From Pocillopora damicornis (Eukaryota): a stretch of DNA of 64,000 bases. The translations under genes and the position numbers were made by a program. Location: the NCBI RefSeq assembly GCF_003704095.1, contig NW_020844283.1, forward strand, positions 62,001 through 126,000. Direction: 5' to 3'. Below the pieces are notes generated by a model. It did not search any database. It saw only the letters and a list, made by a program, of their open reading frames with translations, and had not been told where the DNA came from. Of this stretch, positions 25,539 to 52,653 are shown in pieces. Numbering within the stretch: the stretch's first letter is position 1; each line of letters opens with the position of its first letter.

Positions 25539-28500
25539 CTACCGATGGGGCACTTGTTGATGTGGCGCAGATTGCACTGTATATGGTTGACCCACCACAT
25601 TAGCAGCCGGTGCAAATGGCTGTGGCATTCTTACAACGTACTGTCCACTAGCGTTCGAGCTAGCGTTTACAGGAACTGGCCACGGGGGCTGAGGCTCTCC
25701 AACAGGATGCCACTGGTGTTCGTCCATATTGGCAGCCCATTGAACATTATCCGGCCCATTGGGCCAAGGTCCATTCATAACAGGGCCACTATAATTTGTA
25801 ACTGGAACTTGAGAGCCCTGAGGGGGGGCCTGCAAGTTCGAAAATGTGCTAGGGAAAGCTCCGATAGGTTGTTGAGAGACCGCTGTCTGGGGAACCACCT
25901 GCGATGCAGTTCTTGAAGGTCCTGGGGTTGGAGCTGTTTGTATTGGTACCTCTCGCTGAAGCTGGTTCACTTTGATCTGATTCAAACTCAATTTTGGTTC
26001 CACTTTTCCTCCCGTTGCCTGGCCCGCAACAGCAGAAGACGTAGGTTTTTTCTTTGTCTTGCTCTCGAACTGCGCTAATTGTTCGATTTCCTTATCGATA
26101 CCAGAGAAAGTCTTTTTTGGAACGTTTGCATAGGCCGCGGATGCCGACATTTCAGCGCTGCACCCATTACTCTTAGAATGATCATTGTACTCTGGTCCTT
26201 CCTCTGTACTACTCTTGTGGCGAAGTGGAGGTTGCTGATGTGTTGCGCCCTGTTGTTGCTGTTGCTGCTGCCTCTCTTTTTTCATCTGAGCTTGAAAAGC
26301 GTCTTTCAATTGTTGCTGTTGCTGCTGTGTGCGTTGCTGGTGTTGCCGTTGTTTCTTCATTTCAGTTTTCTTTTTAAATTGCATTAACTCTTTCTCGTGT
26401 TTTTTTTCCAGCTCTTCTTTGTCTTTGCGTTGCCTGGCGAAAAAAGTTACACGTGAGTCCCGCGAAAATTTGTCTGCATAAATAGATGGCCAAACTGTTT
26501 ACAGTACATCATAAATGAAGACTTGACCGATTTCGCCATGTGCATCTTCTTAACTGCACGACCTTCACTCTTTACACCCTAACATAACTATGCATATTCT
26601 CCATACTGTTCTCCATACATTTTCTATGGTACTGACAACAGAATTTGTTGAACAATCTAGAGCTTCTTAAGTTGGTTATCATTTCCTTCAATCTCGCGAC
26701 TTCAATTTGTGATCCAGGGGTGTTATCTTAAGAGAAGATAAATGCTAGTCATTCTAGAAGGGCTAAAGAGGTAACATTACCTTCGAAACTCAGTATTCAC
26801 TTTAGTATCCTACATAACTGGCTGACCCGATACCCATACAAGGAAAAACAATGGCGAAGAACTTCGGGTAGGAGTAAAAAGAAAAATGTAAAATTATCTT
26901 CCTCGCAATCCTTAACGTACTGGTAAAGTTCGCTGATATAGTTTGCGATAGAGAAACAGATCATCAAATTCACACTCTGAACCTTAAAGTTCGAAAATTT
27001 CCTCTTCAAAAACCTATCTCAAATTAATCTTGACTGTAATCTCTTCTCGGTTTTCTGGTGGATTACACGCGATTATGAAATAGCACTATTAAGGCTGAAA
27101 TTGAACAAACGCTAGGCCCTTTACAGGATATCGAAGTAGGAAGACAAACACTGCACCTTGCAAGGAGTTTGTTTAACTCTTCATCTTCCTCAATGGTCAA
27201 GTCTAACGAGATATGTAGTCGATGTAGTCGCTGTTCAAAGTCGCTTTGGGAATGCAGCGACTTCGTTTTCAGTACTGGTTTCCTCTGCTGAGAAATAATA
27301 AGAAACTGCTTATAGAAGTTGTGAGAACTCTCCATGCGATTAACGTGACTAAACGTAGTGCATCTATTCTATTTCCTCCTCCTTTTTTTCTGTTTGGTTT
27401 TTTTTTCTCACAAGGCGTAGCTACTTCGTGTTAGCATATGTAACATTTACTATTTCAGAGAAGCCGTGTGCGCTCTCTACCTGCCCACATCTTACCTGGA
27501 ATTAATCAATCTTTTTTCCGTATTTCTGAGTATATGTAAAGCAGATAAAAATTGCTGTCTTTATTGTTGTTTCGTTTAGTTATTATCGACAAACTCTGAG
27601 TCTGAACGAAGGCAGATGATCATTTTCTCCAGTTCCTGTAAAAACACTCTTTGATCTTAAGAGGTTACCCGGAAATGCAGCTTTTCATCAATTTTTCCTC
27701 GTGAATTCATGAGGTAACCAGTTCGCTGACGTCTTAAGTTGTTTCACCAACGTCATAAGGCATATGCCAGCGAACTGACCTGAGACGCTGGTAAAACGAC
27801 CTAAGAGATTAACGAACTGGTCATAAGCCACAGAGCTGAAAGGACAAGATCAGTTAGTATACCAACAACACCTCAGGTCACAGGTCCGGGCTACACAATT
27901 ACAACGTTACAATTGATACCTGATCTCCCTCTTGCTTTGCCAGTAAATGTCTAGCGCCATCAAAGAGCAAATCGCTTTGGCCACTATTCTTTCTAACTGG
28001 GTCTTTACTAGAAACTGCAGATGGACTATTTGAGCTCTGTCCCTCCAGCGGAGTTGTCTGAGGTGAACTGGAGGACGTGTGGGAAGTCATTGCACCTGGC
28101 TGAGAGCCCACTGAGTTAAGGCTTTCCATAGATGAGCTGGGAGTTAGAGATGGAACTGATCCCATAACTGCAGCAGTGGTCACATCTGAAAGGGTTACAT
28201 CTACAGGTGCTAGCGAAAGCCTTGCATTGTCTAAAGTCTCCAAGAGTGGCGTGTCAGGCCTATCGGATGACGCGGAAATGGTGAATCTTCCCTGAACATA
28301 TTCACTCACTGACGACGTGGCTCTTACCTTTTCGTTTGTAGCACTAATCGACAGCTCATCGTCCGACGAAGCAACAGACTCTATTTTGTGCTTGTCAGGA
28401 TTAAGGTCCTCTCCAGATATCTGAGATTCAAATTTTACCTGGTGTAATGGTAAAGATCGCCCCTCGGAATTAGAATTATCAACCGGGTGAAAAGCATATG

Positions 28501-31500
28501 TTGGGGTCTGTGGCCTTGAAGAATTTGCAGATGGTATAATTTGAAGTTGTTCTTCCCCCTTTGAAACTTGAATATCAAAACTAATTTGCATTTGATTATC
28601 GTTATGTAAAGATGGCGAAGGCAGTTCAGTGTCTGACTTTTTATCAAGTCTTTGATCTATCAACGGAGCTGTACTAGCTACTTCTAGCTGTAGACGGGAT
28701 GCACTGTCTTTTTTTGATAGTTTCTCTTGAGCTTCTGTCTGATCACAAGGCTCCTGACTCAGTCCTGATTCTGAAGTTCTAGACATTTCTTTGTTAGATG
28801 CATCTGACGATACCCCACTCTCGTCACTGTTAGGTTTAAGGACTGGCGGTGATTTATGTTCATTTTTTGTCATCACCTCAGGTGATGACATATTTTTTAA
28901 CACGGGATCTTGAACTTTTTTCACAGTAAAGCGTCGCGTGGGAACTCCAGATGAAGGCACTGTCGTCTGCATAACTTCCACAGGAAATTGACTGTTTAAA
29001 GTTTCACCATTTTGTGCGGGTGCGTTATCACTTCTCTGTGGTTCTTCGTTCGCTGGTTCAGCCACCACTAAATGTGGTTCTTTTCCTTTCTCCAAATCTT
29101 GATCAATCTGATGACCTGATGGAAAACTTTCTTCCCTAGAAGGGGAAGAGCTGATTTCTGAAGTTTGTGGTACTTGCTTATGAGGGACAGGATTCAATAC
29201 CACAGGCTGTTTTACTTTTTCTTCTATCTTTGTAATCAGCGTTGCAGGTTGTTTCTGAGGACCTTCCGAAAGTTGTTCAAGAGAATTAGGTTTCTGCTCA
29301 TAGACTGCCGACTGTTTTTCATCTGGCTGTGATGCCTGTGATGGCTGTGAAATTTCAGCCACAGAAGGTTCATTTTCAGGCTGAATTGAACCTGAATCGG
29401 GATTTTTAACAGCTACAGAAGCGTCCACAAAGAAGGGAACTTCCTTTGGAAAAGGACTTTCCAATGACTAAAAAATAAGATGATAGCGAAAAATTACATC
29501 TCCAGATTACTTTGACAAAAAATTCTACACGATTCAAAAATACTCTGCTCAGTAATTTGGGTATAGACAGAAGGTCATCACTGATGACAATCTATGGTAA
29601 AGTGTTCTCATCACTGCAGATTTGTGGAAATCTTTCTTACTTATTAATGCTGCCACAAATATCTAAGGTATGCCTAAGAAACCTTAAGACGGGAAATCAA
29701 ACGTTCATTGATTAATGGGCTACAAAGGCTGCTAATTGACCTTCAGAACAATACTCGACTAGACTTTTGCAATAGTAAGCCAAGAAACAATTTCATGCAA
29801 AGTGAGAAAACTACCGTAAAAGCCGACGTGAAAACTTAAAGAAATACTACAGTTAGGGAAGACTTGAATTTAAAGGAGTTCACAAACTGTGCTGTTCTGT
29901 CATAACACTTAGCCAGTTCTGACTGACGCAACGACATATTTCTACCTGGCCAACAAATGCACCTCAGACTACTATGTAATACACCCTACCTGCTGTGAAG
30001 GAACTCCAACAGAGATGCTTTCCGATGATATTTGAGTTTCCAGCACTGTCCTTTCACTCGCAGTTTCCGTTCCCGGTTGGCTCTTAGCTTTCTGTACCCT
30101 TTCTTTAGCCTCGATTATCACACGCCGAAGCTGGTCTTCAAACAGCTGTTTGTTGCACTCTTGTAAATGACCTGCTTCCATCTGACAATAAGACAACATA
30201 TCGTTATCAAGCAGGAACAAAACTATGATCTAACAACATTTTACTAAAAGAAGCTCCATAAATAATGAACAGTAATCCTACACCAAGTTGGTAACTATCC
30301 ACCCTTCTTCCCTGGAAAGAATTTAAGTGGATATGACTGTTGTTTCATATAGTATTTACATTGTACCAAACCAACTTCATAAAACGTTCCTCGAAGACTG
30401 ATGCAGGTTGGGGTTGATCCTTACTGCAACTAAGAATGAGTAACCTCAAGTGATAGCGGTGAATTTGAATAACCAAGCCAACAGTTTGCAAAATCTTAAA
30501 TAGCACACAGCTAAGAATTAAGTATAATAAGTGGAAAATAAAAAGGGGCAAACACATCACACACAGCAGACAAACAGTTTAGCTGTTTTACAGGATGACA
30601 AATAAAAGTCACACTGTCATTTAATCAAATCATCATCATTATAATAAGGACACTCATTAATTGAATAGTTTTCATTGTCATTGTAGACCAAAAGTATATA
30701 ACTTTAAAAAACATATTTCATTATCTACAACGTATGTAAGTTTGTCTCACCATATTAGCAGAAACTTCATCTGGCTCATCATCATCAATACCAAACTTGA
30801 AAGTTATCCTACTGTTTTTATATGTGTCAAAGCTGCACTCAACCACAGGACCCTCTGGAGACCCTTCAATCCTTTTCAGTTGAATCCTTGGTAATCTTTC
30901 TTTCTTTGCTTGCTTTACAGCTGTTTTGTTATCTTTTTTCTCCAAGCCTGATGCTAAAGGTGCTGCTGACAAAGAAAGATTAATAATAGCAGCACTCTGG
31001 CTTCCATTAGTGGTAAAGCCCACAGATCCAGAGGATGAAACCTCGCCTACAGAAGTTGGGGCAGAAGGAACTGATGATATTGATGATGTATTTGACCCAT
31101 AACCAGATGAACTGTATGCCACTTCAGTAATCACACCGCTACTGAACGTAGTTTCAGTTGGAGTGGGCAGAGCTGGTGAAGGCAAAGGCTCTACCTCCTA
31201 AAAATAAATGCATTAAAAAATTCAAGTCAACCATTACTGATAGCATTATTCTCCACAGTTTACAATCAAACTAAGTCTAAAATTAACTAAAGTTTAGGAA
31301 TTTAAAAAAAGAGGAAAAGAGGGAAACCCTCAATGGATAGAAGGTAATAAGAAATTGAGTTATATTTAATAATTGTATGTTCTAAATATTTGGAGAAGTT
31401 TGTGAACATTGATTGATGATAGAAAAACTTCATAGTATTTTTATGGGGCTAACACATCAATTCACAAGAGATGAAATGCAATATTCCTTCACAGGGTTTT

Positions 31501-46980: not shown

Positions 46981-48239
46981 CGAGTGGTTAAACCGAAGCA
47001 CTTATTTTTCCATGCTACTTATGATGTTCCGTCGTTAAAAGTAAGAACACAGGCAATATAAGGAAAATTAATACATTTGAACATGATGGGAGTCTTCGCA
47101 AGGATCTTCAGAGGTTGGCAAAGGTTTACTACGAGACGCGTGATTATGCCCAAAATGATTGTGACGCGTGAATTTAATAGAAAGGCAAAATAGGGTGAGA
47201 TTTGAAGTTTTTCCTTTTAATATTAATTAAAGTGCATGTGACGCGTAAATTCTCCTAAGAAATTCGAGCGTAGAACGGGATCAGGACCCCCTGGCCTCAC
47301 CTTTGATATCCTCTCCTTGTGCTCAACAAAAAGCCGATAGTCGAGAAATCAATGGATCCTGTAACGATAAGTTTGGGTTAAAAAGCCTTTTTATTACTTC
47401 AACATAAACCGAGCAATTACATGTTCAAAACCCGAAGAAATAACCGACTACATCCCGAATGCGCGTATCGTTATATAATCATTAGTGGCGCGCTCATTGT
47501 GACAAGTTCAATTGGTAATTTATGCCAGCATACTTCTAACAGTATTTCGTCACAGATCCCAAGTAAATGCACTGGAATCGATTCCAAAAGTAAATTATCC
47601 TATGGAATATGTTCAACTTTTATGCGTGAGCGTCACCAAACATGTTCCCCGATGGACCGGGCTTATGTTAGGGAAGAAACTTTGCACGAGCCTTAACTGA
47701 TAAAGGGACACAAACAAGTCTCGCACGAATTGCGCATCATTCCCCTTGGTTGATGAGAAATAAGAGAAAATATCTATCGAAACGAATTTCGTTAGAAGTC
47801 TGGGCCACCACACTTTCATGTCTGCGATTATTTTACTGACAAGTAACGATTACAACAATTCACGTCATCGATATGACCCGATTCGCCGATTCAGATCACA
47901 ATTGAAAACACATGCAATTTTCTTTCCTTCCAAATCTAACTACCAAGAAGGACGTGCCATGAGTTGTAGGGAGATTCTGATTACGTTAATCTAAACTTCG
48001 GCTACAAATCGTGAGTGATTAACATACGTTATGACTAGTCATCAGTTAATCGCGTTACCATTGATTTGTATCGCACAAAGACCAAAAAATTACATTTTTC
48101 TGTTCCTTACTTCACTCAACCTACTGTAACTTTGAGCCTAACAAATGAATGTACAACTCTCTAGCATTTGGATATTTTTGATATTTTTGATACTTTGCTA
48201 CTTGACTGAGCTAACAGATGCACTTTTCCCTCAGCAATG

Positions 48240-51200
48240 CTAATTATTGCGGTTGACAAAAATAAAGTAAACTGGTACACCAGATAGAACAAATGCCAGA
48301 GCAAACAATGATGACTGAGGTTTGGCAAACAGAGGGGCAATAATAAGGTAGCACGAAATCATCACCATGACAATAGGAATGCCAATCCACACTTTGTAGG
48401 GACGATACTCATGTGGCCTCTTCCAGCGCAGAACCAGAAGTGACAGGAATGTGCAACCCAGGAAAATCCATGCAACAAAGCTGAAACAGCTCAGCAAGGA
48501 ATCCAGATCACCAAGTATTAACATGCAAATGGAAATAAATGATGGGAACATTATAGCACGTAATGGAGTGTGGAAACGCTTGCTGATAACCGCTAAATAT
48601 CGAGGCATGTGTCCTTGTTTGGCTGCTGAGCAAACAACTCTTCCATTAGTAAAAATGGAGCCATTAGCAGCACCATAACAGGAACATGCTACAAACAGTG
48701 GCATAACAACTACAAGGGTGGGTGTAACTTTCTCTGCAACAGATACAGCTACTGCTGTGGATGACAACATTTCTGCTGGTGTCAGAATACTTAGATAAGC
48801 TATATTGATCAGTGTATAGCAAATAGTGACAAGAGGAAGAGCAATCATTACTGCACGAGGGAGATTCTTGTGAGGATTCTGTAATTCCTCTGTCACATAA
48901 TTGAGTTGGTTCCAGCCATCATAAGCCCACAATCCACTAAAGAATGCATGTGCAATTTCTCCAATGTTTGTATTAGTTCCTTTAAAGGGAGACTCAAAGT
49001 TTCCATTGTGTCCACTAGCAATTCTTGAAGCTCCTATCACCACTATTATCCCAATTGCCAGGAGTTTCATTATCATGAAAACTATTTGCATCTGACCTGC
49101 CCAACGGGAACTCACACAGTTCACAGTCGTGATTATTATGATGGAGATTGCAGCTACAAGTTTGATGAGGTCTTCAGGTTCGGTGTTGTTGTTCCCAAGA
49201 AATGGCTGGACAGCATAAGAAGCAAAACTCAATGTGATAATGGCAACAGAGGCTGGTTTCAAAATAAGTACCATTGTCCAGCTCACAAGAAAGCCAGGAA
49301 GAGGCCCTAGAGCTTCCTGGATGTATGTTAGCTCACCACCAGAACGTTGAATCATTGTTCCTAATTCACAATAGCAGAGAGCTCCCAAAGTTGCCATCAC
49401 TCCAGATATAATCCAAATCAAAAGAGTCATTCCCACCGAACCAGAATGCAGAAGGACAAAACGTGGAGTAACAAATATGCCTGAACCTATCATTACACCA
49501 ACAATAAGTGACACGCCTTGCAGGAGTGTTACATTTCGGGTCAATTTTCCTTCTTCCCCTTTTGAATCCTTCTGTGACTTAATCAATTTTTCTTCGGCAC
49601 TTGCATGGTGATCATGGAATGAAATACTAGCATTCAAATCATCCCCCAGCATGGAACACTTCGCCATGTCCTTGTTTGCTTCTGATTGTTTCTCTGTTAA
49701 GTCCTTTGCATCTAAAAGAAAATAAAACAGAAAGGTCTTTTTGTTACAAAACCAAATACACCAAATTAAGAACAAAAATTTGCATGCACTGAAATAAATT
49801 AAAATACTCTAAGACAATTTCAAAATTTTTTTACCATAATAAAGCCAAGATTAGAGTGAAAGCTGGTTACTAACTGTCTCCTGCCATATATAAGGCATTA
49901 TAAGGCCTGTTACAACCATCTATAGAAGAATATAACATTTGTATAGCCCTTTTCAAAACTTTATTGTACTTTAAGATTGGTATGCAATACAAAGTGATGT
50001 ACTAGTACAATTATCACTGTGTGAATTGGAGTAGCAACATCTCTACCAACATTAGAAGAGACAGAAAGCCAGTTTTCAAGATTGGCCAGCTGCTTGCTGA
50101 TACAATTAAATGATTAAAAAAAAAGCATTTAAAAGAAAGTTTGTCAACCTGTGTCACACCACCATCAAATCTGTTACACAAAAGAGACAAGTTATCTTTA
50201 AACTGGAAAGATATAGTGCATATCATACTCAACATCAGTAGTTAAAGATTAACTCAAAGTTTTGGTTAAAACTGGGAACTAATGAAATGATAGTAAATAA
50301 ACAAACTGGCAAATCCAGAGGGTATCCGGTCAATTTGCCACCACAACAAACTGACCCCACCACAAAACTTGCTACCACTGAGAGTCAAATCATATCAGTG
50401 GTGGCAAGTTTAATGTGGTGGTGAATTGACTGTAAACATATCCAAAGTCCATCCTGTATGATTACAAAAGTAGTACATCTGAGTGATGTGGCCAAATAAC
50501 AAAATTTTGTTAAAACTAATAAGACAGTTGGCTGTTGATTGCATGTTATGGTGCTCTATCATATAACCATTTTAACCTCAATAATATTCAGACTGGTTAT
50601 TCATGGATAACTGTATCAAGTGATAATAGTGGTAAGAATTCAAGAACAAACCATGACTGAAACTCATGCATATGAAATCTAGAGTCCACATGAGTCTAAG
50701 CAAGCACTAAAATTGACAGCATTTGAGCAATCAACAACCACGCTCCAAGTCAATGAAGCTACACCTGACACAGAGGAATATTTCCACGAAATATTTCCTA
50801 CAGGACTAATAAAGAACACAGATCAGAGGATTCCAGTCATCCAATTCACTCCCCTCCACTTAAAACTATTAAATTTACAAGGTGTCAAGAAAGGACATTG
50901 TCAGGCCAGGCACATGATATGTATCAGTGGATGTTTGAGGATGTGTGCACACTTATTTTTAGGCAGAAGCCTCTTACTTTAATCAAGCCTGAGGAAATAT
51001 CTGCTAACAGTAGCGCAAGTTCCATAAAGGAAATTTTCAAAACAAACACTGGTCACATCAAATGTTTTCTCCCGGCCCTGATCTCTAATTTGAAAAAAGT
51101 CTTTAAAACACTTAACAGTTCTAAACAGAATATATTAAAATACACATGGCAACCAGGTGGACAACCAGACATGGTTTGATGCTACTCTGATTTAAAGATT

Positions 51201-51512
51201 TGATAAATGTAACCGTAGAAGTTACAATTCATAGACCCAACGTTTCGACACTCCCGTCTAGTGCCTTCATCAACAGTGATCTAAACTAATTAGAGATCGT
51301 ATAAAAGGACCTCTTGTTGCAGCGTTTAGATCAGGAGTGTAACTTCTTCGGTTACATTCATTAAATCTTTTAAACCAGAATAGCATCAAACCATGTCTAA
51401 TTCTAAACAGGATTAGCGTTAGTCAGCTTCTCATCATGAACGATTCCATATCTTTGTTACCATTCCTGCTAATATGCATACAAAAAGTACCTTTCATCCT
51501 TGAACGCTTCAT
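48240..51512 (-). CDS. SLC7A9: SLC7 L-type amino-acid transporter light chain, b(0,+)AT-like, about 497 aa, 2 exons
   Basis: Main exon 49711-48240 encodes a 12-TM APC fold with IGSGIF, GALCYCELGT..SGGE and GLWAYDGWNQLNYVTEEL (the YDGWNQ form typical of SLC7A9). Short first exon 51512-51491 (MKRSRMK, phase 1); an alternative first exon 51592-51556 is also in frame. The symbol means most similar family member. Confidence 0.9.
50329..50431. repeat. Short foldback / palindromic element in the SLC7 intron
   Basis: CCACCACAAAACTTGCTACCACTGA pairs with TCAGTGGTGGCAAGTTTAATGTGGTGG, with outer GTCAATT/AATTGAC. Confidence 0.75.
51167..51398. mobile_element. 60-bp inverted repeat (51167-51226 / 51338-51398) enclosing a hammerhead-like motif; Penelope-type remnant
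   Basis: AGACATGGTTTGATGCTA..AGAAGTTACA versus TGTAACTTCT..TAGCATCAAACCATGTCT, with an inner GATCTAAAC/GTTTAGATC pair. Confidence 0.7.
51235..51277 (-). ncRNA. Variant minimal hammerhead ribozyme motif
   Basis: Minus strand TTGATGA-A-GGCACT-AGACGGG-AGTGTC-GAAA-CGTT: C3U core variant, 6-bp helix II, palindromic AACGUU helix III, weak helix I. Confidence 0.5.
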
Positions 51513-51528
51513 CTTGTCCTGTTAAAGA

Positions 51529-51612
51529 TCACCTCATTCCTGCTTCATTCGTGACCTTCGGTCACTGCCGAACGCTGGAACGTAGCCGCCATCTTGAGTT
51601 ACACGTCATCCG
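51529..51612 (-). promoter_or_regulatory. SLC7 5' leader: CRE/ATF-like TGACGT, YY1-type AAGATGGCGG and three overlapping uORFs
   Basis: uORFs 51592-51545 (MAATFQRSAVTEGHE*), 51548-51534 (MKQE*) and 51537-51529 (MR*) are linked by ATGA overlaps. Confidence 0.5.
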
Positions 51613-52653
51613 CATAATACCCAACCCGCCCCTCCCCACCCAACGACCTCTCGTTGTTGCCGGGGAGGGGGGGGGAAAACACACTACGAGGCAATTTATT
51701 GAAAATAAGGAGAAACGGACAGGAAAAAATGGGGAGTGGGGGGATGGGGGAGGAGGCAGGAGGAGCATTCTTGCGAAGAAATGATGTCATTTGCCAATCT
51801 TGCTCTCAGCGAACATTGCAGTCGTGCTAGGATGGACGTAAGAATCTGGGAACGAGATTGAATCATCAGAAGCGACAGCAAACAATCACTTTTACCGGAA
51901 AACTAAGAGACCGACAAACAAAAATTATTTTAGACCGCCACTTCTTATCTTAAATTTCCATTCTTCCTTTTCTTCATTCGAAAAAGATAAAAATAAACCG
52001 CACTCCTCTGATCAGTCTGTTTGATAACACAAGGCGCCCGGATTTGTGTTCATCACCACCATCGTAGCCCACAGCTTTCATTTACATAGTTTCTGTTACA
52101 GTGAGATGCCAAAAATGCCAGGCAAGTTTTCCCGTTATGTACGATAGAAGCAACTTACAATTACGATTTTTTTTGTTTTTGTTTTTCTTTATGGGGGAGG
52201 TGGGGGAGGTGGGGGGCTGGAGAGCAGCGTTGAACTCTGCGAGCAACAAAACGTCCAGAGCCAAACTTTTCCTTTAAGCAAACAATTCAAACCTCCGACC
52301 CCTTCATGTTAATGAAACAGCGCCAACGAATTTTAATGATAATTTTTACACCTGATCGAAGCATCAATCGATCTTCTTGAAATATTCGTATGAATTACAT
52401 GTAAAAGTAGCCATGTATTGTATTGTAACTACCAATGGTCATTAAATTTTTTGTTATAAAACTGTTTCTCACGCTCGACGACAGGCAACTCCGTTCTGCA
52501 GTTTGTGTTTTTTCAAACAAGTGTGCTCATCGGATCTTCCGTTGTCTTTCTTCTTCTCATCCGGCACGGAAGTGGTGTATTATTAATTTGAAGTTTTGCA
52601 GGAATATCTACAGTACAGTGTACAAAACCATTGCAAATCAACGAACCATACAA

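What the first reader, a model, noticed from the sequence alone, without database searches (positions are those of the whole stretch)
49160..49220. SLC7 light chain lacks the heavy-chain disulfide Cys and has an N-glycosylation sequon in its place
Seen: the TM3-TM4 extracellular loop reads YAVQPFLGNNNTEPEDLIKLVA, with no Cys but an N-N-T sequon. Established: LAT-type light chains have a conserved Cys here (PF..C.PP) that bonds to the SLC3 heavy chain (rBAT/4F2hc), and they are typically unglycosylated. Inference: a heavy-chain-independent, self-glycosylated b(0,+)AT-like transporter, possibly a distinct cnidarian subfamily relevant to amino-acid uptake or host-symbiont exchange.
Basis: partly seen in the sequence, partly recalled or inferred. 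Interest (0 to 1): 0.75.

Follow-up and report, generated by a model that had tools for sequence, protein, structure and literature searches.

The report
Coral amino-acid transporter lacking partner-binding parts
This is an expressed coral gene for an amino-acid exchanger from a sea-anemone-and-coral lineage that has lost both the cysteine and the tail its relatives use to hold a helper protein, while the sugar-attachment motif seen in its place is a recent chance feature.

Summary
Window 49152-49217 (minus strand) encodes YAVQPFLGNNNTEPEDLIKLVA, and N160 aligns with human b(0,+)AT Cys144.

The gene is real and in use:
- A 22-nt coding exon 1 and a 1779-nt intron precede one exon holding 490 of 497 codons.
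- The spliced form is present in 4 of 4 RNA runs.
- dN/dS is 0.09-0.19.

It belongs to a monophyletic clade (SH-aLRT 99) with named members from Pocillopora, Stylophora, Oculina, Exaiptasia and Nematostella. All 24 clade rows lack the loop Cys. All also lack the about 30-40-residue cytoplasmic C-terminal tail, which in b(0,+)AT binds rBAT's N-terminal helix (PMC9110406). Of the other 97 hits, 92 keep the Cys. All 6 paralogous loci in this genome keep it, and the genome encodes an rBAT-like heavy chain with its Cys.

The sequon reading fails:
- It occurs in 4 of 23 clade loops, against 2.4 expected by chance.
- It is absent in P. meandrina (NNNA).
- It lies in an 8-residue loop, too close to the membrane for glycosylation.

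Working without a heavy chain is plausible but untested. Nematode AAT-4 to AAT-9 are a precedent.

The parts
51491..51604 (-). Exon 1: 5' leader plus the first 22 coding bases. The ATG is at 51512-51510 and encodes MKRSRMK plus one base. The exon reaches at least 51588-51604.
   Evidence: RNA contigs of 4 of 4 runs end their upstream piece at 51588-51604 and join 51491 to 49711. The sequence was read. The peptide MKRSRMK was located and matches the N-terminus of database protein P0001.
49712..51490 (-). The only intron inside the coding region, 1779 nt, GT..AG on the minus strand.
   Evidence: The joint 49711/51491, 'skips 1779, ends CT..AC' on the + strand, is in 4 of 4 RNA runs. The acceptor ...ttttag|A was read and the donor AAAG|gtac.
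47409..49711 (-). Exon 2: 490 of the 497 codons (49711-48243), the stop at 48242-48240, and a 3' UTR of at least about 0.83 kb. One contig runs past 47300.
   Evidence: Single RNA contigs cover 47300/47409/47422/47437 to 49711 in the four runs. Pfam AA_permease_2 matches at 8.2e-65.
49176..49199 (-). Extracellular loop 2 (EL2), residues L157-P164 (LGNNNTEP), between the TM3 helix (122-156) and the TM4 helix (165-185).
   Evidence: DSSP on the AlphaFold2 model, mean pLDDT 83.1. Alignment to b(0,+)AT is.
49182..49190 (-). N160-N161-T162. N160 takes the place of the heavy-chain disulfide Cys (human b(0,+)AT C144). The N-x-T sequon depends on T162.
   Evidence: P. meandrina (P0121) reads NNNA and Stylophora (P0135) reads EGNA at the same place.
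48240..48257 (-). End of the protein: ...FIFVNRNN then the stop, five residues after the F-x-F-V end of TM12. The cytoplasmic C-terminal helix and tail of other b(0,+)AT-like proteins are missing.
   Evidence: Tails after position 470 are 2-19 residues in 24 of 24 clade rows. They are 33-40 residues in the five Cys-less rows outside the clade. The 34 non-clade rows printed, counted there from position 462, have 40-57 residues.
48459..48491 (-). TM10 stretch S393-L403, which lines the second ('pocket 2') substrate cavity. Clade-specific changes are N376S, Y377C and A381V (human numbering), plus Y386L in the stony-coral members.
   Evidence: The role of pocket 2 and the loss of transport in Y386A are from PMC7159911 (passages).
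51141..51474 (.). Dispersed repeat inside the intron. It is not part of the transporter mRNA.
   Evidence: Summed word depth reaches about 10,000, with many short contigs running on into unlike sequence (tables 2, 7, 8).

Best explanation
SHOWN. Window 47.4-51.6 kb (minus strand) holds an expressed, spliced gene under purifying selection. It encodes a 497-residue, 12-helix amino-acid/polyamine/organocation (APC)-fold transporter of the LAT branch of SLC7, closest to b(0,+)AT (SLC7A9).

It belongs to a clade found in stony corals and sea anemones. Four features set the clade apart from the other b(0,+)AT-like genes of the same animals:
1. The EL2 cysteine that makes the disulfide to the SLC3 heavy chain is gone in every member. 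A variable, acidic, Ser/Asn-rich 8-residue loop replaces it.
2. The protein stops a few residues after TM12. It therefore lacks the C-terminal helix that in b(0,+)AT packs on rBAT's N-terminal helix, and the Val-Pro-Pro trafficking motif.
3. Nearly the whole coding region is one exon, while the paralogues are multi-exon.
4. The TM10 wall of substrate pocket 2 is remodelled.

The main substrate-site residues are kept: the G-S-G of TM1, and W247, D250, W252 and Q254 of TM6.

INFERRED. The protein most likely still works as an obligatory amino-acid exchanger with a b(0,+)-like core site. The Asp that human b(0,+)AT uses for cationic substrates is retained. It most likely folds and travels without a disulfide-linked SLC3 partner, as a stand-alone light chain like the nematode AAT-4 to AAT-9 proteins and the prokaryotic LATs.

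The N-N-T sequon is a by-product of free drift in a loop that is no longer constrained. It arose within Pocillopora by an Ala/Thr difference and is probably not glycosylated.
For: Identity:
- Pfam AA_permease_2 matches at 8.2e-65.
- b(0,+)AT1 is the best solved relative, 435 bits against 382 for native xCT and 360 for LAT1.
- The AF2 model has 12 TM helices.

Expression and structure:
- The joint 49711/51491 is in 4 of 4 polyA/cDNA RNA runs from 4 studies.
- P0001 (497 aa, from transcript assemblies) is near-identical, differing at one residue.

Selection: dN/dS was 0.09-0.19 in the 14 of 15 pairs that could be computed.

Clade:
- 23 rows form one side of a branch with SH-aLRT 99.
- Named members are P. 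meandrina, Stylophora pistillata, Oculina patagonica, Exaiptasia diaphana and Nematostella vectensis.

Cys and tail:
- 0 of 24 clade rows have a loop Cys, against 92 of 97 others.
- Tails are 2-19 residues in 24 of 24 clade rows. The five Cys-less outsiders all keep 33-40 residues.
- All 6 paralogous loci in this genome keep the Cys.

The heavy-chain system exists here: contig C601 encodes a type-II membrane protein of glycoside hydrolase family 13 (GH13) with 'APKC' just after its TM.

Role of the lost parts: the CH-NH contact and the VPP motif are described in PMC9110406 (passages). The EL2 disulfide is described in PMC7159911, PMC5983779 and bioRxiv 10.1101/577551 (passages).

Single-exon ORF shared with other corals: 8 metagenome loci at 81-83% identity carry the ORF uninterrupted over residues 1-475 or 9-475. 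They sit on contigs of 3.5-11.3 kb with the same ...LL|DAK acceptor context.

Sequon incidental: plus PMC6683751 and PMC3226467 (passages).

Precedent: AAT-4 to AAT-9 lack the Cys (PMC6284198, discussion passage citing Veljkovic 2004).
Against: - No experiment bears on this protein.
- Loss of the Cys alone does not free a light chain. Mutating the disulfide cysteines did not break the y+L-4F2hc interaction (PMC5983779, passage). [quoted passage not shown]
- The intramembrane contact face TM4 shows 0 of 21 positions with a fixed clade-specific change. EL4a/b is also largely conserved. A non-covalent partner is therefore not excluded.
- The genome also holds a second TM-anchored GH13 gene without a Cys after its TM (contig C2282), which could be such a partner.
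- Retention of D250 does not prove cationic substrates. Y386, needed for Arg and cystine transport in the human protein, is Leu in all 15 stony-coral rows.
- The tree used the quick method, has no outgroup and is midpoint-rooted. The link of the clade to the other cnidarian b(0,+)AT-like genes has weak support (74).
- Only five clade rows carry a species name.
Confidence: 0.5

Rival explanations
1. The protein still works as a heteromer. It binds an SLC3-type heavy chain non-covalently through TM4-TM1' packing and ectodomain contacts with EL2-EL4. The partner would be either the rBAT-like gene on contig C601 or the Cys-less membrane-anchored GH13 protein on contig C2282. That partner supplies the glycans and the trafficking signal.
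For: - Disulfide-less mammalian pairs still associate (PMC5983779, passage).
- TM4 has no fixed clade-specific change: 0 of 21 positions.
- EL2 of the clade is strongly acidic, E+D = 32% of loop residues. The heavy-chain surface facing LAT1 is positively charged (bioRxiv 10.1101/577551, passage).
- The genome has a TM-anchored GH13 protein without a Cys after its TM.
Against: - The cytoplasmic C-terminal helix that binds the heavy chain's N-terminal helix is absent in 24 of 24 clade rows.
- The C2282 protein is more similar to true bacterial alpha-glucosidases (2.3e-88) than to rBAT (8.5e-71). It therefore looks like an enzyme rather than a heavy chain.
- Nematode Cys-less AATs are reported not to interact with the heavy chains (PMC6284198, passage).
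Confidence: 0.3
2. One reading: N160 carries an N-glycan that replaces the heavy chain's glycans, giving a self-glycosylated, self-trafficking light chain.
For: - N160 lies exactly at the Cys position, on the extracellular side, in an N-x-T sequon, the better type of acceptor.
Against: - The sequon is in 4 of 23 clade loops against 2.4 expected by chance.
- It is absent in P. meandrina and Stylophora and in 6 of the 8 full-length metagenome orthologues.
- The loop has 8 residues, with N160 4 residues from TM3 and 5 from TM4.
- Sites under 10-12 residues from a TM span are treated as not glycosylated (PMC6683751 methods passage; PMC3226467 introduction passage).
- No other extracellular sequon is conserved.
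Confidence: 0.05
3. It is an artefact or a decaying copy: a sequencing error at the Cys codon, or a processed pseudogene.
For: The coding region lies almost wholly in one exon, which is what a retrocopy looks like.
Against: - The open frame has 497 codons and the gene is spliced and expressed in 4 of 4 RNA runs.
- dN/dS is 0.09-0.19.
- The same features occur in 24 of 24 clade rows across corals and anemones.
- There are no read differences in the loop.
Confidence: 0.01

Closest known systems
b(0,+)AT (SLC7A9), the light chain of system b(0,+), with heavy chain rBAT (SLC3A1)
   Same: - It is the best-scoring solved relative: 3e-129 over residues 25-472.
- It has the 12-TM LeuT-type fold.
- The TM1 G-S-G and the TM6 residues W, D, W, Q (human W230, D233, W235, Q237) are kept, as are F378, S379 and W383 of TM10 (roles from PMC7159911, passages).
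   Different: - No EL2 Cys: N160 stands in place of C144.
- No C-terminal helix and no Val-Pro-Pro motif.
- N227S, and N376S, Y377C and A381V in the whole clade; Y386L in stony corals.
- Almost single-exon coding region.
- Partnership with rBAT was not tested.
C. elegans AAT-4 to AAT-9 (for example AAT-6 and AAT-9), LAT-type light-chain homologues without the Cys
   Same: They are animal LAT-type SLC7 proteins that lack the conserved Cys and are reported not to pair with the SLC3-type heavy chains (PMC6284198, discussion passage citing Veljkovic et al. 2004). AAT-6 is held at the membrane by a scaffold protein instead (PMC3419730, title and abstract). That AAT-9 transports on its own in oocytes is my recollection, not from a call.
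   Different: - No nematode sequence was among the rows I aligned, so common descent was not tested.
- The coral clade groups with the other cnidarian b(0,+)AT-like genes in the midpoint-rooted tree, at weak support (74). That points to an independent loss.
- AAT-6 relies on a C-terminal PDZ-type interaction, by my recollection, whereas the coral proteins have almost no C-terminal tail.
Prokaryotic LATs (BasC; SteT), which work with no heavy chain
   Same: They have the minimal 12-TM core with only a few residues after TM12. BasC (6f2g_A, 444 aa; 9h76_A, 435 aa) aligns to query residues 47-469 up to its residue 426. They have no partner protein.
   Different: They are much more distant (6e-52, against 3e-129 for b(0,+)AT). 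The coral clade descends from heavy-chain-type animal light chains and lost these features secondarily.
CAT subfamily of SLC7 (SLC7A1-4), heavy-chain-independent N-glycoproteins
   Same: They are SLC7 members that work without SLC3.
   Different: They are only distantly related (CAT1 2e-16). By my recollection the CATs have 14 TM helices and are glycosylated in a long loop. The coral protein has 12 TM helices and no long extracellular loop.

Membership tests
APC superfamily / SLC7 LAT subfamily (light chains of heteromeric amino acid transporters) | Amino-acid permease domain with 12 TM helices in the 5+5 inverted-repeat fold | tested here: met
   PF13520 at 8.2e-65 over residues 48-453. The AF2 model has pTM 0.81 and a helix pattern matching TM1a/b to TM12.
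APC superfamily / SLC7 LAT subfamily (light chains of heteromeric amino acid transporters) | Unwound TM1 G-S-G motif and the TM6 substrate-site residues | tested here: met
   G61, S62 and G63 are invariant in 55 of 55 aligned rows. W247, D250, W252 and Q254 are present.
APC superfamily / SLC7 LAT subfamily (light chains of heteromeric amino acid transporters) | Conserved Cys in EL2 (TM3-TM4 loop) that forms the disulfide with the SLC3 heavy chain | tested here: not met
   N160 is at that column. No Cys lies between residues 101 and 183. 0 of 24 clade rows have it, against 92 of 97 others.
APC superfamily / SLC7 LAT subfamily (light chains of heteromeric amino acid transporters) | Physical association with an SLC3 heavy chain that is needed for surface delivery | not testable with these tools
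   No complex prediction or experiment was available. A candidate heavy chain with its Cys exists in the genome (contig C601).
b(0,+)AT (SLC7A9) orthologues | Closest to SLC7A9 among SLC7 members | tested here: met
   Bit scores against solved structures were b(0,+)AT 435; xCT 423 (consensus-mutated) and 382 (native); y+LAT2 368; LAT2 367; LAT1 360; Asc-1 338. All named hits in the top 120 are annotated b(0,+)AT-like, apart from a few arthropod rows.
b(0,+)AT (SLC7A9) orthologues | Pocket-2 residues Asp233 and Tyr386, which set b(0,+)AT apart from LAT1 (Gly255 and Val408 there) | tested here: inconclusive
   Asp is kept (D250). Tyr386 is Leu (L403) in the query and 14 other stony-coral rows, and Tyr in P0017-P0022. 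The roles are from PMC7159911 (passages).
b(0,+)AT (SLC7A9) orthologues | Cytoplasmic C-terminal helix with the Val-Pro-Pro motif | tested here: not met
   The protein ends ...FIFVNRNN, five residues after position 470. Human, ovine and other b(0,+)AT-like rows have about 40 more residues (PMC9110406, passages).
b(0,+)AT (SLC7A9) orthologues | One-to-one orthology with bilaterian SLC7A9 in a tree | tested here: not met
   The clade is one of several cnidarian b(0,+)AT-like lineages. In the midpoint-rooted tree it groups with other cnidarian paralogues (support 74), not inside the bilaterian group. There was no outgroup, so the root is open.
Heavy-chain-independent animal LATs (nematode AAT-4 to AAT-9 type) | LAT-type sequence without the EL2 Cys | tested here: met
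   The nematode case is from PMC6284198 (passage).
Heavy-chain-independent animal LATs (nematode AAT-4 to AAT-9 type) | Transport and surface expression without a heavy chain | not testable with these tools
   This needs expression with and without the coral SLC3-like proteins.
Heavy-chain-independent animal LATs (nematode AAT-4 to AAT-9 type) | Shared descent with the nematode proteins | not tested
   No nematode AAT sequence was among the 120 listed hits or in the tree.
N-glycosylated membrane transporter (glycan at N160) | Acceptor Asn at least about 10-12 residues from the nearest TM span, and conserved among orthologues | tested here: not met
   N160 is 4 and 5 residues from the flanking helices. 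The sequon is in 4 of 23 clade loops against 2.4 expected. The rule is from PMC6683751 and PMC3226467 (passages).

The most novel reading that the evidence does not exclude
Anthozoans carry a second, independent animal invention of a heavy-chain-free LAT transporter. An ancient, probably retrocopied b(0,+)AT-like gene shed both heavy-chain anchors: the EL2 Cys and the C-terminal helix with its trafficking motif. It returned to a prokaryote-like minimal 12-TM exchanger. In reef corals its second substrate pocket was also rebuilt (Y386L, Y377C, N376S, A381V). With neither the heavy chain's glycans nor the VPP signal, it would reach a membrane by a different route and carry a different substrate set from the six Cys-bearing paralogues. 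That could make it a dedicated carrier for an internal or host-symbiont interface.
Probability: 0.3. Interest if true: 0.55.

Novelty: new variant of a known kind. Interest (0 to 1): 0.36.

Why it matters
Heteromeric amino-acid transporters are defined by the disulfide between an SLC7 light chain and an SLC3 heavy chain. How far light chains can do without the heavy chain is still debated.

This clade is a natural experiment. For the whole history of stony corals and sea anemones it has lacked two of the heavy-chain contact elements, while six normal paralogues and an rBAT-like heavy chain sit in the same genome. It can be tested directly by expressing the protein with and without the coral heavy chain.

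For coral biology it marks one amino-acid exchanger that probably differs from its paralogues in trafficking and in substrate pocket. A b(0,+)AT-like gene has been proposed as a cysteine importer induced by native symbionts in Acropora (PMC7850063, passage; which gene is meant is in a supplementary figure I could not see).

The practical lesson is narrower. The glycosylation sequon that drew attention is noise. The correlated loss of the C-terminal tail is the informative feature.

Tried and rejected
I used the one metagenome scan instead. It gave stony-coral orthologues only, so whether the sea-anemone genes are also single-exon is unknown. L039 (60% identity, uninterrupted) lies on a 2.4-kb contig that could be cDNA.

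2. Decay of the heavy-chain interface in TM4. A scan for positions fixed in the clade and different from a conserved residue in 89 other rows gave 21 sites, none in TM4 or EL4a and one in EL4b. This gives no support for interface decay. I report it as evidence against, or neutral.

3. Heavy-chain candidates. PF00128 found three loci. C601 is rBAT-like, with a TM followed by 'APKC', and lacks a 9-residue GH13 motif in the alignment. C2282 is TM-anchored, lacks that Cys and is closer to true alpha-glucosidases. C4119 has no such N-terminus in the ORFs listed. I could not decide whether C2282 is a heavy chain.

The model's coordinates are not exposed, so distances between the four clade-specific cysteines (C100, C330, C346, C394) could not be measured.

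5. Pseudogene or sequencing error: rejected.

6. CAT-type identity: rejected.

7. Literature. Searches found no paper describing a Cys-less or tail-less cnidarian SLC7 clade. No paper in one search held 'Nematostella' together with the SLC7/SLC3 terms. This covers only the held library.

They may bear on two points:
- which Acropora SLC7A9-like gene is symbiosis-induced (PMC7850063, figs S13 and S16);
- the residue-level b(0,+)AT-rBAT interface (PMC7159911, fig. S6).

9. The spliced 497-residue product was never joined by me for a search. All searches used the exon-2 ORF by reference, and P0001 was used only by its id.

10. Rows left out:
- The tree used 63 of the 120 listed hits plus the query. 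The 57 left out were P0001 (near-identical to the query), P0014, rows with large insertions (P0026, P0081, P0114) and mostly near-duplicate vertebrate and other bilaterian or cnidarian b(0,+)AT rows.
- One search dropped P0001, P0026, P0027, P0032, P0048, P0060, P0081, P0108 and P0114.
- Searches used 23 clade rows (without P0001).
Full report
**What is at the coordinates**

The minus strand of window 48240-49775 is one long open frame. From its first ATG (49667) it gives 475 residues ending in a stop at 48240-48242. The protein matches Pfam AA_permease_2 at 8.2e-65.

Among solved structures it is closest to b(0,+)AT1/SLC7A9 (6li9_B 3e-129, 435 bits). Next come xCT, y+LAT2, LAT2, LAT1 and Asc-1. 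The CATs are far behind at about 1e-16. In the residue-by-residue alignment to native-numbered human b(0,+)AT, 'pflgnnntep' faces 'pfyvgc-kpp'. N160 therefore lies at the place of Cys144, the residue that is disulfide-bonded to rBAT Cys114 (PMC7159911, passage). The protein has no Cys between residues 101 and 183.

**The gene is real, spliced and expressed**

A database protein from transcript assemblies (P0001, 497 aa) is identical apart from one residue. It starts MKRSRMK-DAKDL..., 22 residues upstream of MAKCS. Those seven codons lie at window 51512-51492, followed by GT. The large exon is preceded by ...ttttag.

I laid contigs of four polyA/cDNA RNA runs from four studies on 47300-52300. 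Every run had one contig of 2.3-2.6 kb covering about 47300-47437 to 49711. Each contig then skipped 1779 bases (GT..AG on the minus strand) to 51491-51588/51604. A spliced form cannot come from contaminating DNA, so the gene is transcribed. No run showed a difference in 49160-49220.

The coding region is thus 22 bases in exon 1 and 1469 in exon 2, giving 497 codons. Searches used the exon-2 frame by reference.

**Which organism**

The 90%-identity cluster of P0001 contains a Pocillopora meandrina protein. The next cluster (91% identity) is Stylophora pistillata 'b(0,+)-type amino acid transporter 1-like'. The genome has 234 Mb in 4393 contigs. From memory this fits the published P. damicornis assembly, but that is recollection, not a call.

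**A clade-wide loss, not a local oddity**

The protein search returned 2905 relatives at E <= 1e-30, of which 120 were listed. The top 22 plus P0041 are 56-100% identical. They include Oculina patagonica (85%), Exaiptasia diaphana (56%) and Nematostella vectensis (56%). Everything after that is 50% identical or less.

In a 64-row tree these 23 rows form one side of a branch with SH-aLRT 99. The tree used the quick method, LG+C20 and a midpoint root, with 57 of the 120 hits left out as listed under Tried and rejected.
- Their sister is a pair of unnamed ENA proteins (P0027, P0032).
- The next neighbours are other cnidarian b(0,+)AT-like proteins (support 74).
- Bilaterian SLC7A9 lies on the other side.

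In the alignment of the query with all 120 hits:
- 0 of 24 clade rows have a Cys between P155 and L167, against 92 of the 97 others.
- The five outsiders without it are P0027, P0046, P0059, P0068 and P0091.

Within this genome, all six other LAT-type loci (contigs C3895 and C2502, multi-exon) keep the Cys as PGC, PDC or PAC. In the sea-anemone members a Cys lies seven residues earlier, at the end of TM3, as it also does in human b(0,+)AT. The stony-coral members, including this one, have none there.

Every clade member stops 2-19 residues after position 470; here it ends FIFVNRNN-stop. The five Cys-less outsiders keep 33-40 residues after position 470. The 34 non-clade rows printed, counted there from position 462, have 40-57 residues and share a ...T.K.Q.L.DVA.PE... 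pattern. Only two outsiders have short ends, and both keep the Cys: P0026, a 787-residue model, and P0108, marked partial.

In the ovine b(0,+)AT-rBAT structure this tail is the cytoplasmic C-terminal helix. It interacts with the N-terminal helix of rBAT and is followed by the Val-Pro-Pro motif implicated in ER-Golgi trafficking (PMC9110406, passages). The clade has therefore lost the covalent extracellular link and the cytoplasmic contact together. No other row of the 121 shows that combination.

**Other properties of the clade**

Gene structure:
- The single-exon body is shared. Eight coral-metagenome loci at 81-83% identity carry the frame uninterrupted over residues 1-475 or 9-475. A ninth is cut by its contig end.
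- They lie on contigs of 3.5-11.3 kb, with the same ...LL|DAK context upstream.
- The paralogues in this genome are split into at least seven coding pieces.
- This fits an old retrocopy that gained a 5' exon. Intron loss is not excluded, and the sea-anemone genes could not be checked.

Selection is purifying: dN/dS was 0.09-0.19 in 14 of 15 pairs, with one dS saturated.

Substrate-site residues named in PMC7159911 are mostly kept: G61, S62, G63, S147, L246, W247, D250, W252, Q254, F395, S396 and W400. The differences are:
- N227 is Ser.
- The TM10 wall of 'pocket 2' differs throughout the clade: N376S, Y377C and A381V.
- Tyr386 is Leu in all 15 stony-coral rows but Tyr in P0017-P0022. Its alanine mutant nearly abolishes Arg transport in the human protein, with cystine uptake reported as similar.

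Four of the 21 clade-fixed differences are changes to Cys: C100, C330, C346 and C394.

**The sequon**

Among 23 clade loops (P0001 dropped as the same species), 4 hold N-x-S/T: this gene, P0006, P0008 and P0012. Shuffling each loop predicts 2.42, and drawing from the pooled loop composition predicts 2.44.

Close relatives lack it. P. meandrina reads RNNNAEPED and Stylophora reads KEGNAEPED. The Pocillopora sequon therefore depends on Thr162, where both close relatives have Ala. Two of the eight full-length metagenome orthologues have NNSS and six have none.

The AlphaFold2 model (55-row alignment, mean pLDDT 83.1, pTM 0.81) puts TM3 at 122-156 and TM4 at 165-185. The loop is eight residues, and N160 is 4 and 5 residues from the helices.
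- Another gives 'a minimum of 12 residues' (PMC3226467, introduction passage).
- Both cite Nilsson and von Heijne 1993, which I did not read.
- The same first paper notes that STT3B does serve some small loops, so glycosylation is unlikely rather than impossible.

Across the clade the only well-conserved sequons are at position 45 (16 of 23, on the cytoplasmic side before TM1) and at 335 (22 of 23, inside TM8, where N335 is invariant in all 55 rows of the family alignment). 'Self-glycosylated' is not supported.

**The heavy chain**

The genome has three GH13 (PF00128) loci.
- C601 encodes a type-II protein with about 40 cytoplasmic residues, a TM helix, then APKC and the GH13 domain. It lacks a nine-residue conserved motif. 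This is an rBAT-like heavy chain with its Cys.
- C2282 encodes a TM-anchored GH13 protein with no Cys after the TM. It has higher similarity to bacterial alpha-glucosidases than to rBAT.

So the classical system is present for the six Cys-bearing paralogues, and a Cys-less candidate partner cannot be ruled out.

**Weighing independence**

For:
- The joint loss of both heavy-chain-specific elements in every member, over the full depth of the clade.
- The nematode precedent: AAT-4 to AAT-9 lack the Cys and are said not to interact with ATGP-1/2 (PMC6284198, discussion passage).
- The fact that light chains are the transport-competent unit (bioRxiv 10.1101/2022.11.15.516651, introduction passage).

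Against:
- Disulfide-less mammalian pairs still associate (PMC5983779, passage).
- TM4 shows no clade-specific change.
- No experiment exists.

I put stand-alone function at about one half, non-covalent pairing at about 0.3, and a functional glycan at N160 at about 0.05.

**Novelty**

The proteins are already in public databases under automatic b(0,+)AT-like names. Cys-less LATs are known from nematodes. My three literature searches found no description of this anthozoan clade or of its tail loss. I class it as a new variant of a known kind, of moderate interest.

**Limits**

- The tree has no outgroup.
- Only five clade members carry a species name.
- Papers were read as passages found by term search, not in full.

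Noticed in passing
window 51513-51593 (minus strand), 5' leader in exon 1: Three tiny upstream ORFs are chained by overlapping ATGA. The first is ATG at 51593 with 15 codons and a stop; then come MKQE-stop and MR-stop. All lie inside the transcribed leader, just before the MKRSRMK start. This could mean translational control, or use of the downstream Met (MAKCS); Stylophora is annotated with both a 497-aa and a 475-aa isoform.
   Followed up: partly
window 51141-51474 (in the intron): This stretch collects summed RNA contig depth of up to about 10,000, from dozens of short contigs that run on into unlike sequence. It is a dispersed repeat transcribed from many places, not part of this mRNA.
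   Followed up: no
window residues C100, C330, C346, C394 (codons 49368-49370, 48678-48680, 48630-48632, 48486-48488): Four of the 21 substitutions fixed in the Cys-less clade are changes to cysteine, inside TM2, TM8 and TM10. C394 is next to pocket-2 residues F395 and S396. Distances could not be measured because model coordinates are not exposed.
   Followed up: partly
G000 contig C601 (L024 1420-2391, minus) and contig C2282 (L023 1285-2361, minus): There are two membrane-anchored GH13 genes. The C601 gene is rBAT-like, with 'APKC' after its TM and a nine-residue deletion of a conserved GH13 motif. The C2282 gene has no Cys after its TM and is closer to true alpha-glucosidases. The stretch after its first coding exon holds masked letters, and the opposite strand there carries a retrotransposon pol-like frame.
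   Followed up: partly
P0091 (Pocillopora meandrina) against L004 (this genome, contig C3895): A different, tail-bearing paralogue has Tyr at the disulfide position in P. meandrina (PFYPDYEAPAY), while the matching locus in this genome has Cys (PFYPDCEA-PAY). P0068 has Ser there. This is either a second, recent Cys loss or an allele.
   Followed up: no
P0027 and P0032 (unnamed ENA proteins); L040: The sister pair of the clade lacks the canonical Cys but keeps a 42-residue C-terminal tail counted from position 462 (33 after position 470 for P0027). P0027 has none in the loop, and P0032 has one displaced by a few residues. It may be an intermediate state. The organism is unknown.
   Followed up: no
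window 27899-29464 (minus strand): A 521-codon open frame rich in Ser, Pro, Glu and Gln has no Pfam match. It is probably a large disordered exon of a neighbouring gene.
   Followed up: partly
window 49647 region, run X14: One RNA run (organism C) carries a 3-base deletion near the MAKCS start, matching database variants that read MGDD instead of MLGDD (P0122, P0125). It also has 17 other differences. This is a sister species or lineage of the same genus, and its loop is unchanged.
   Followed up: no
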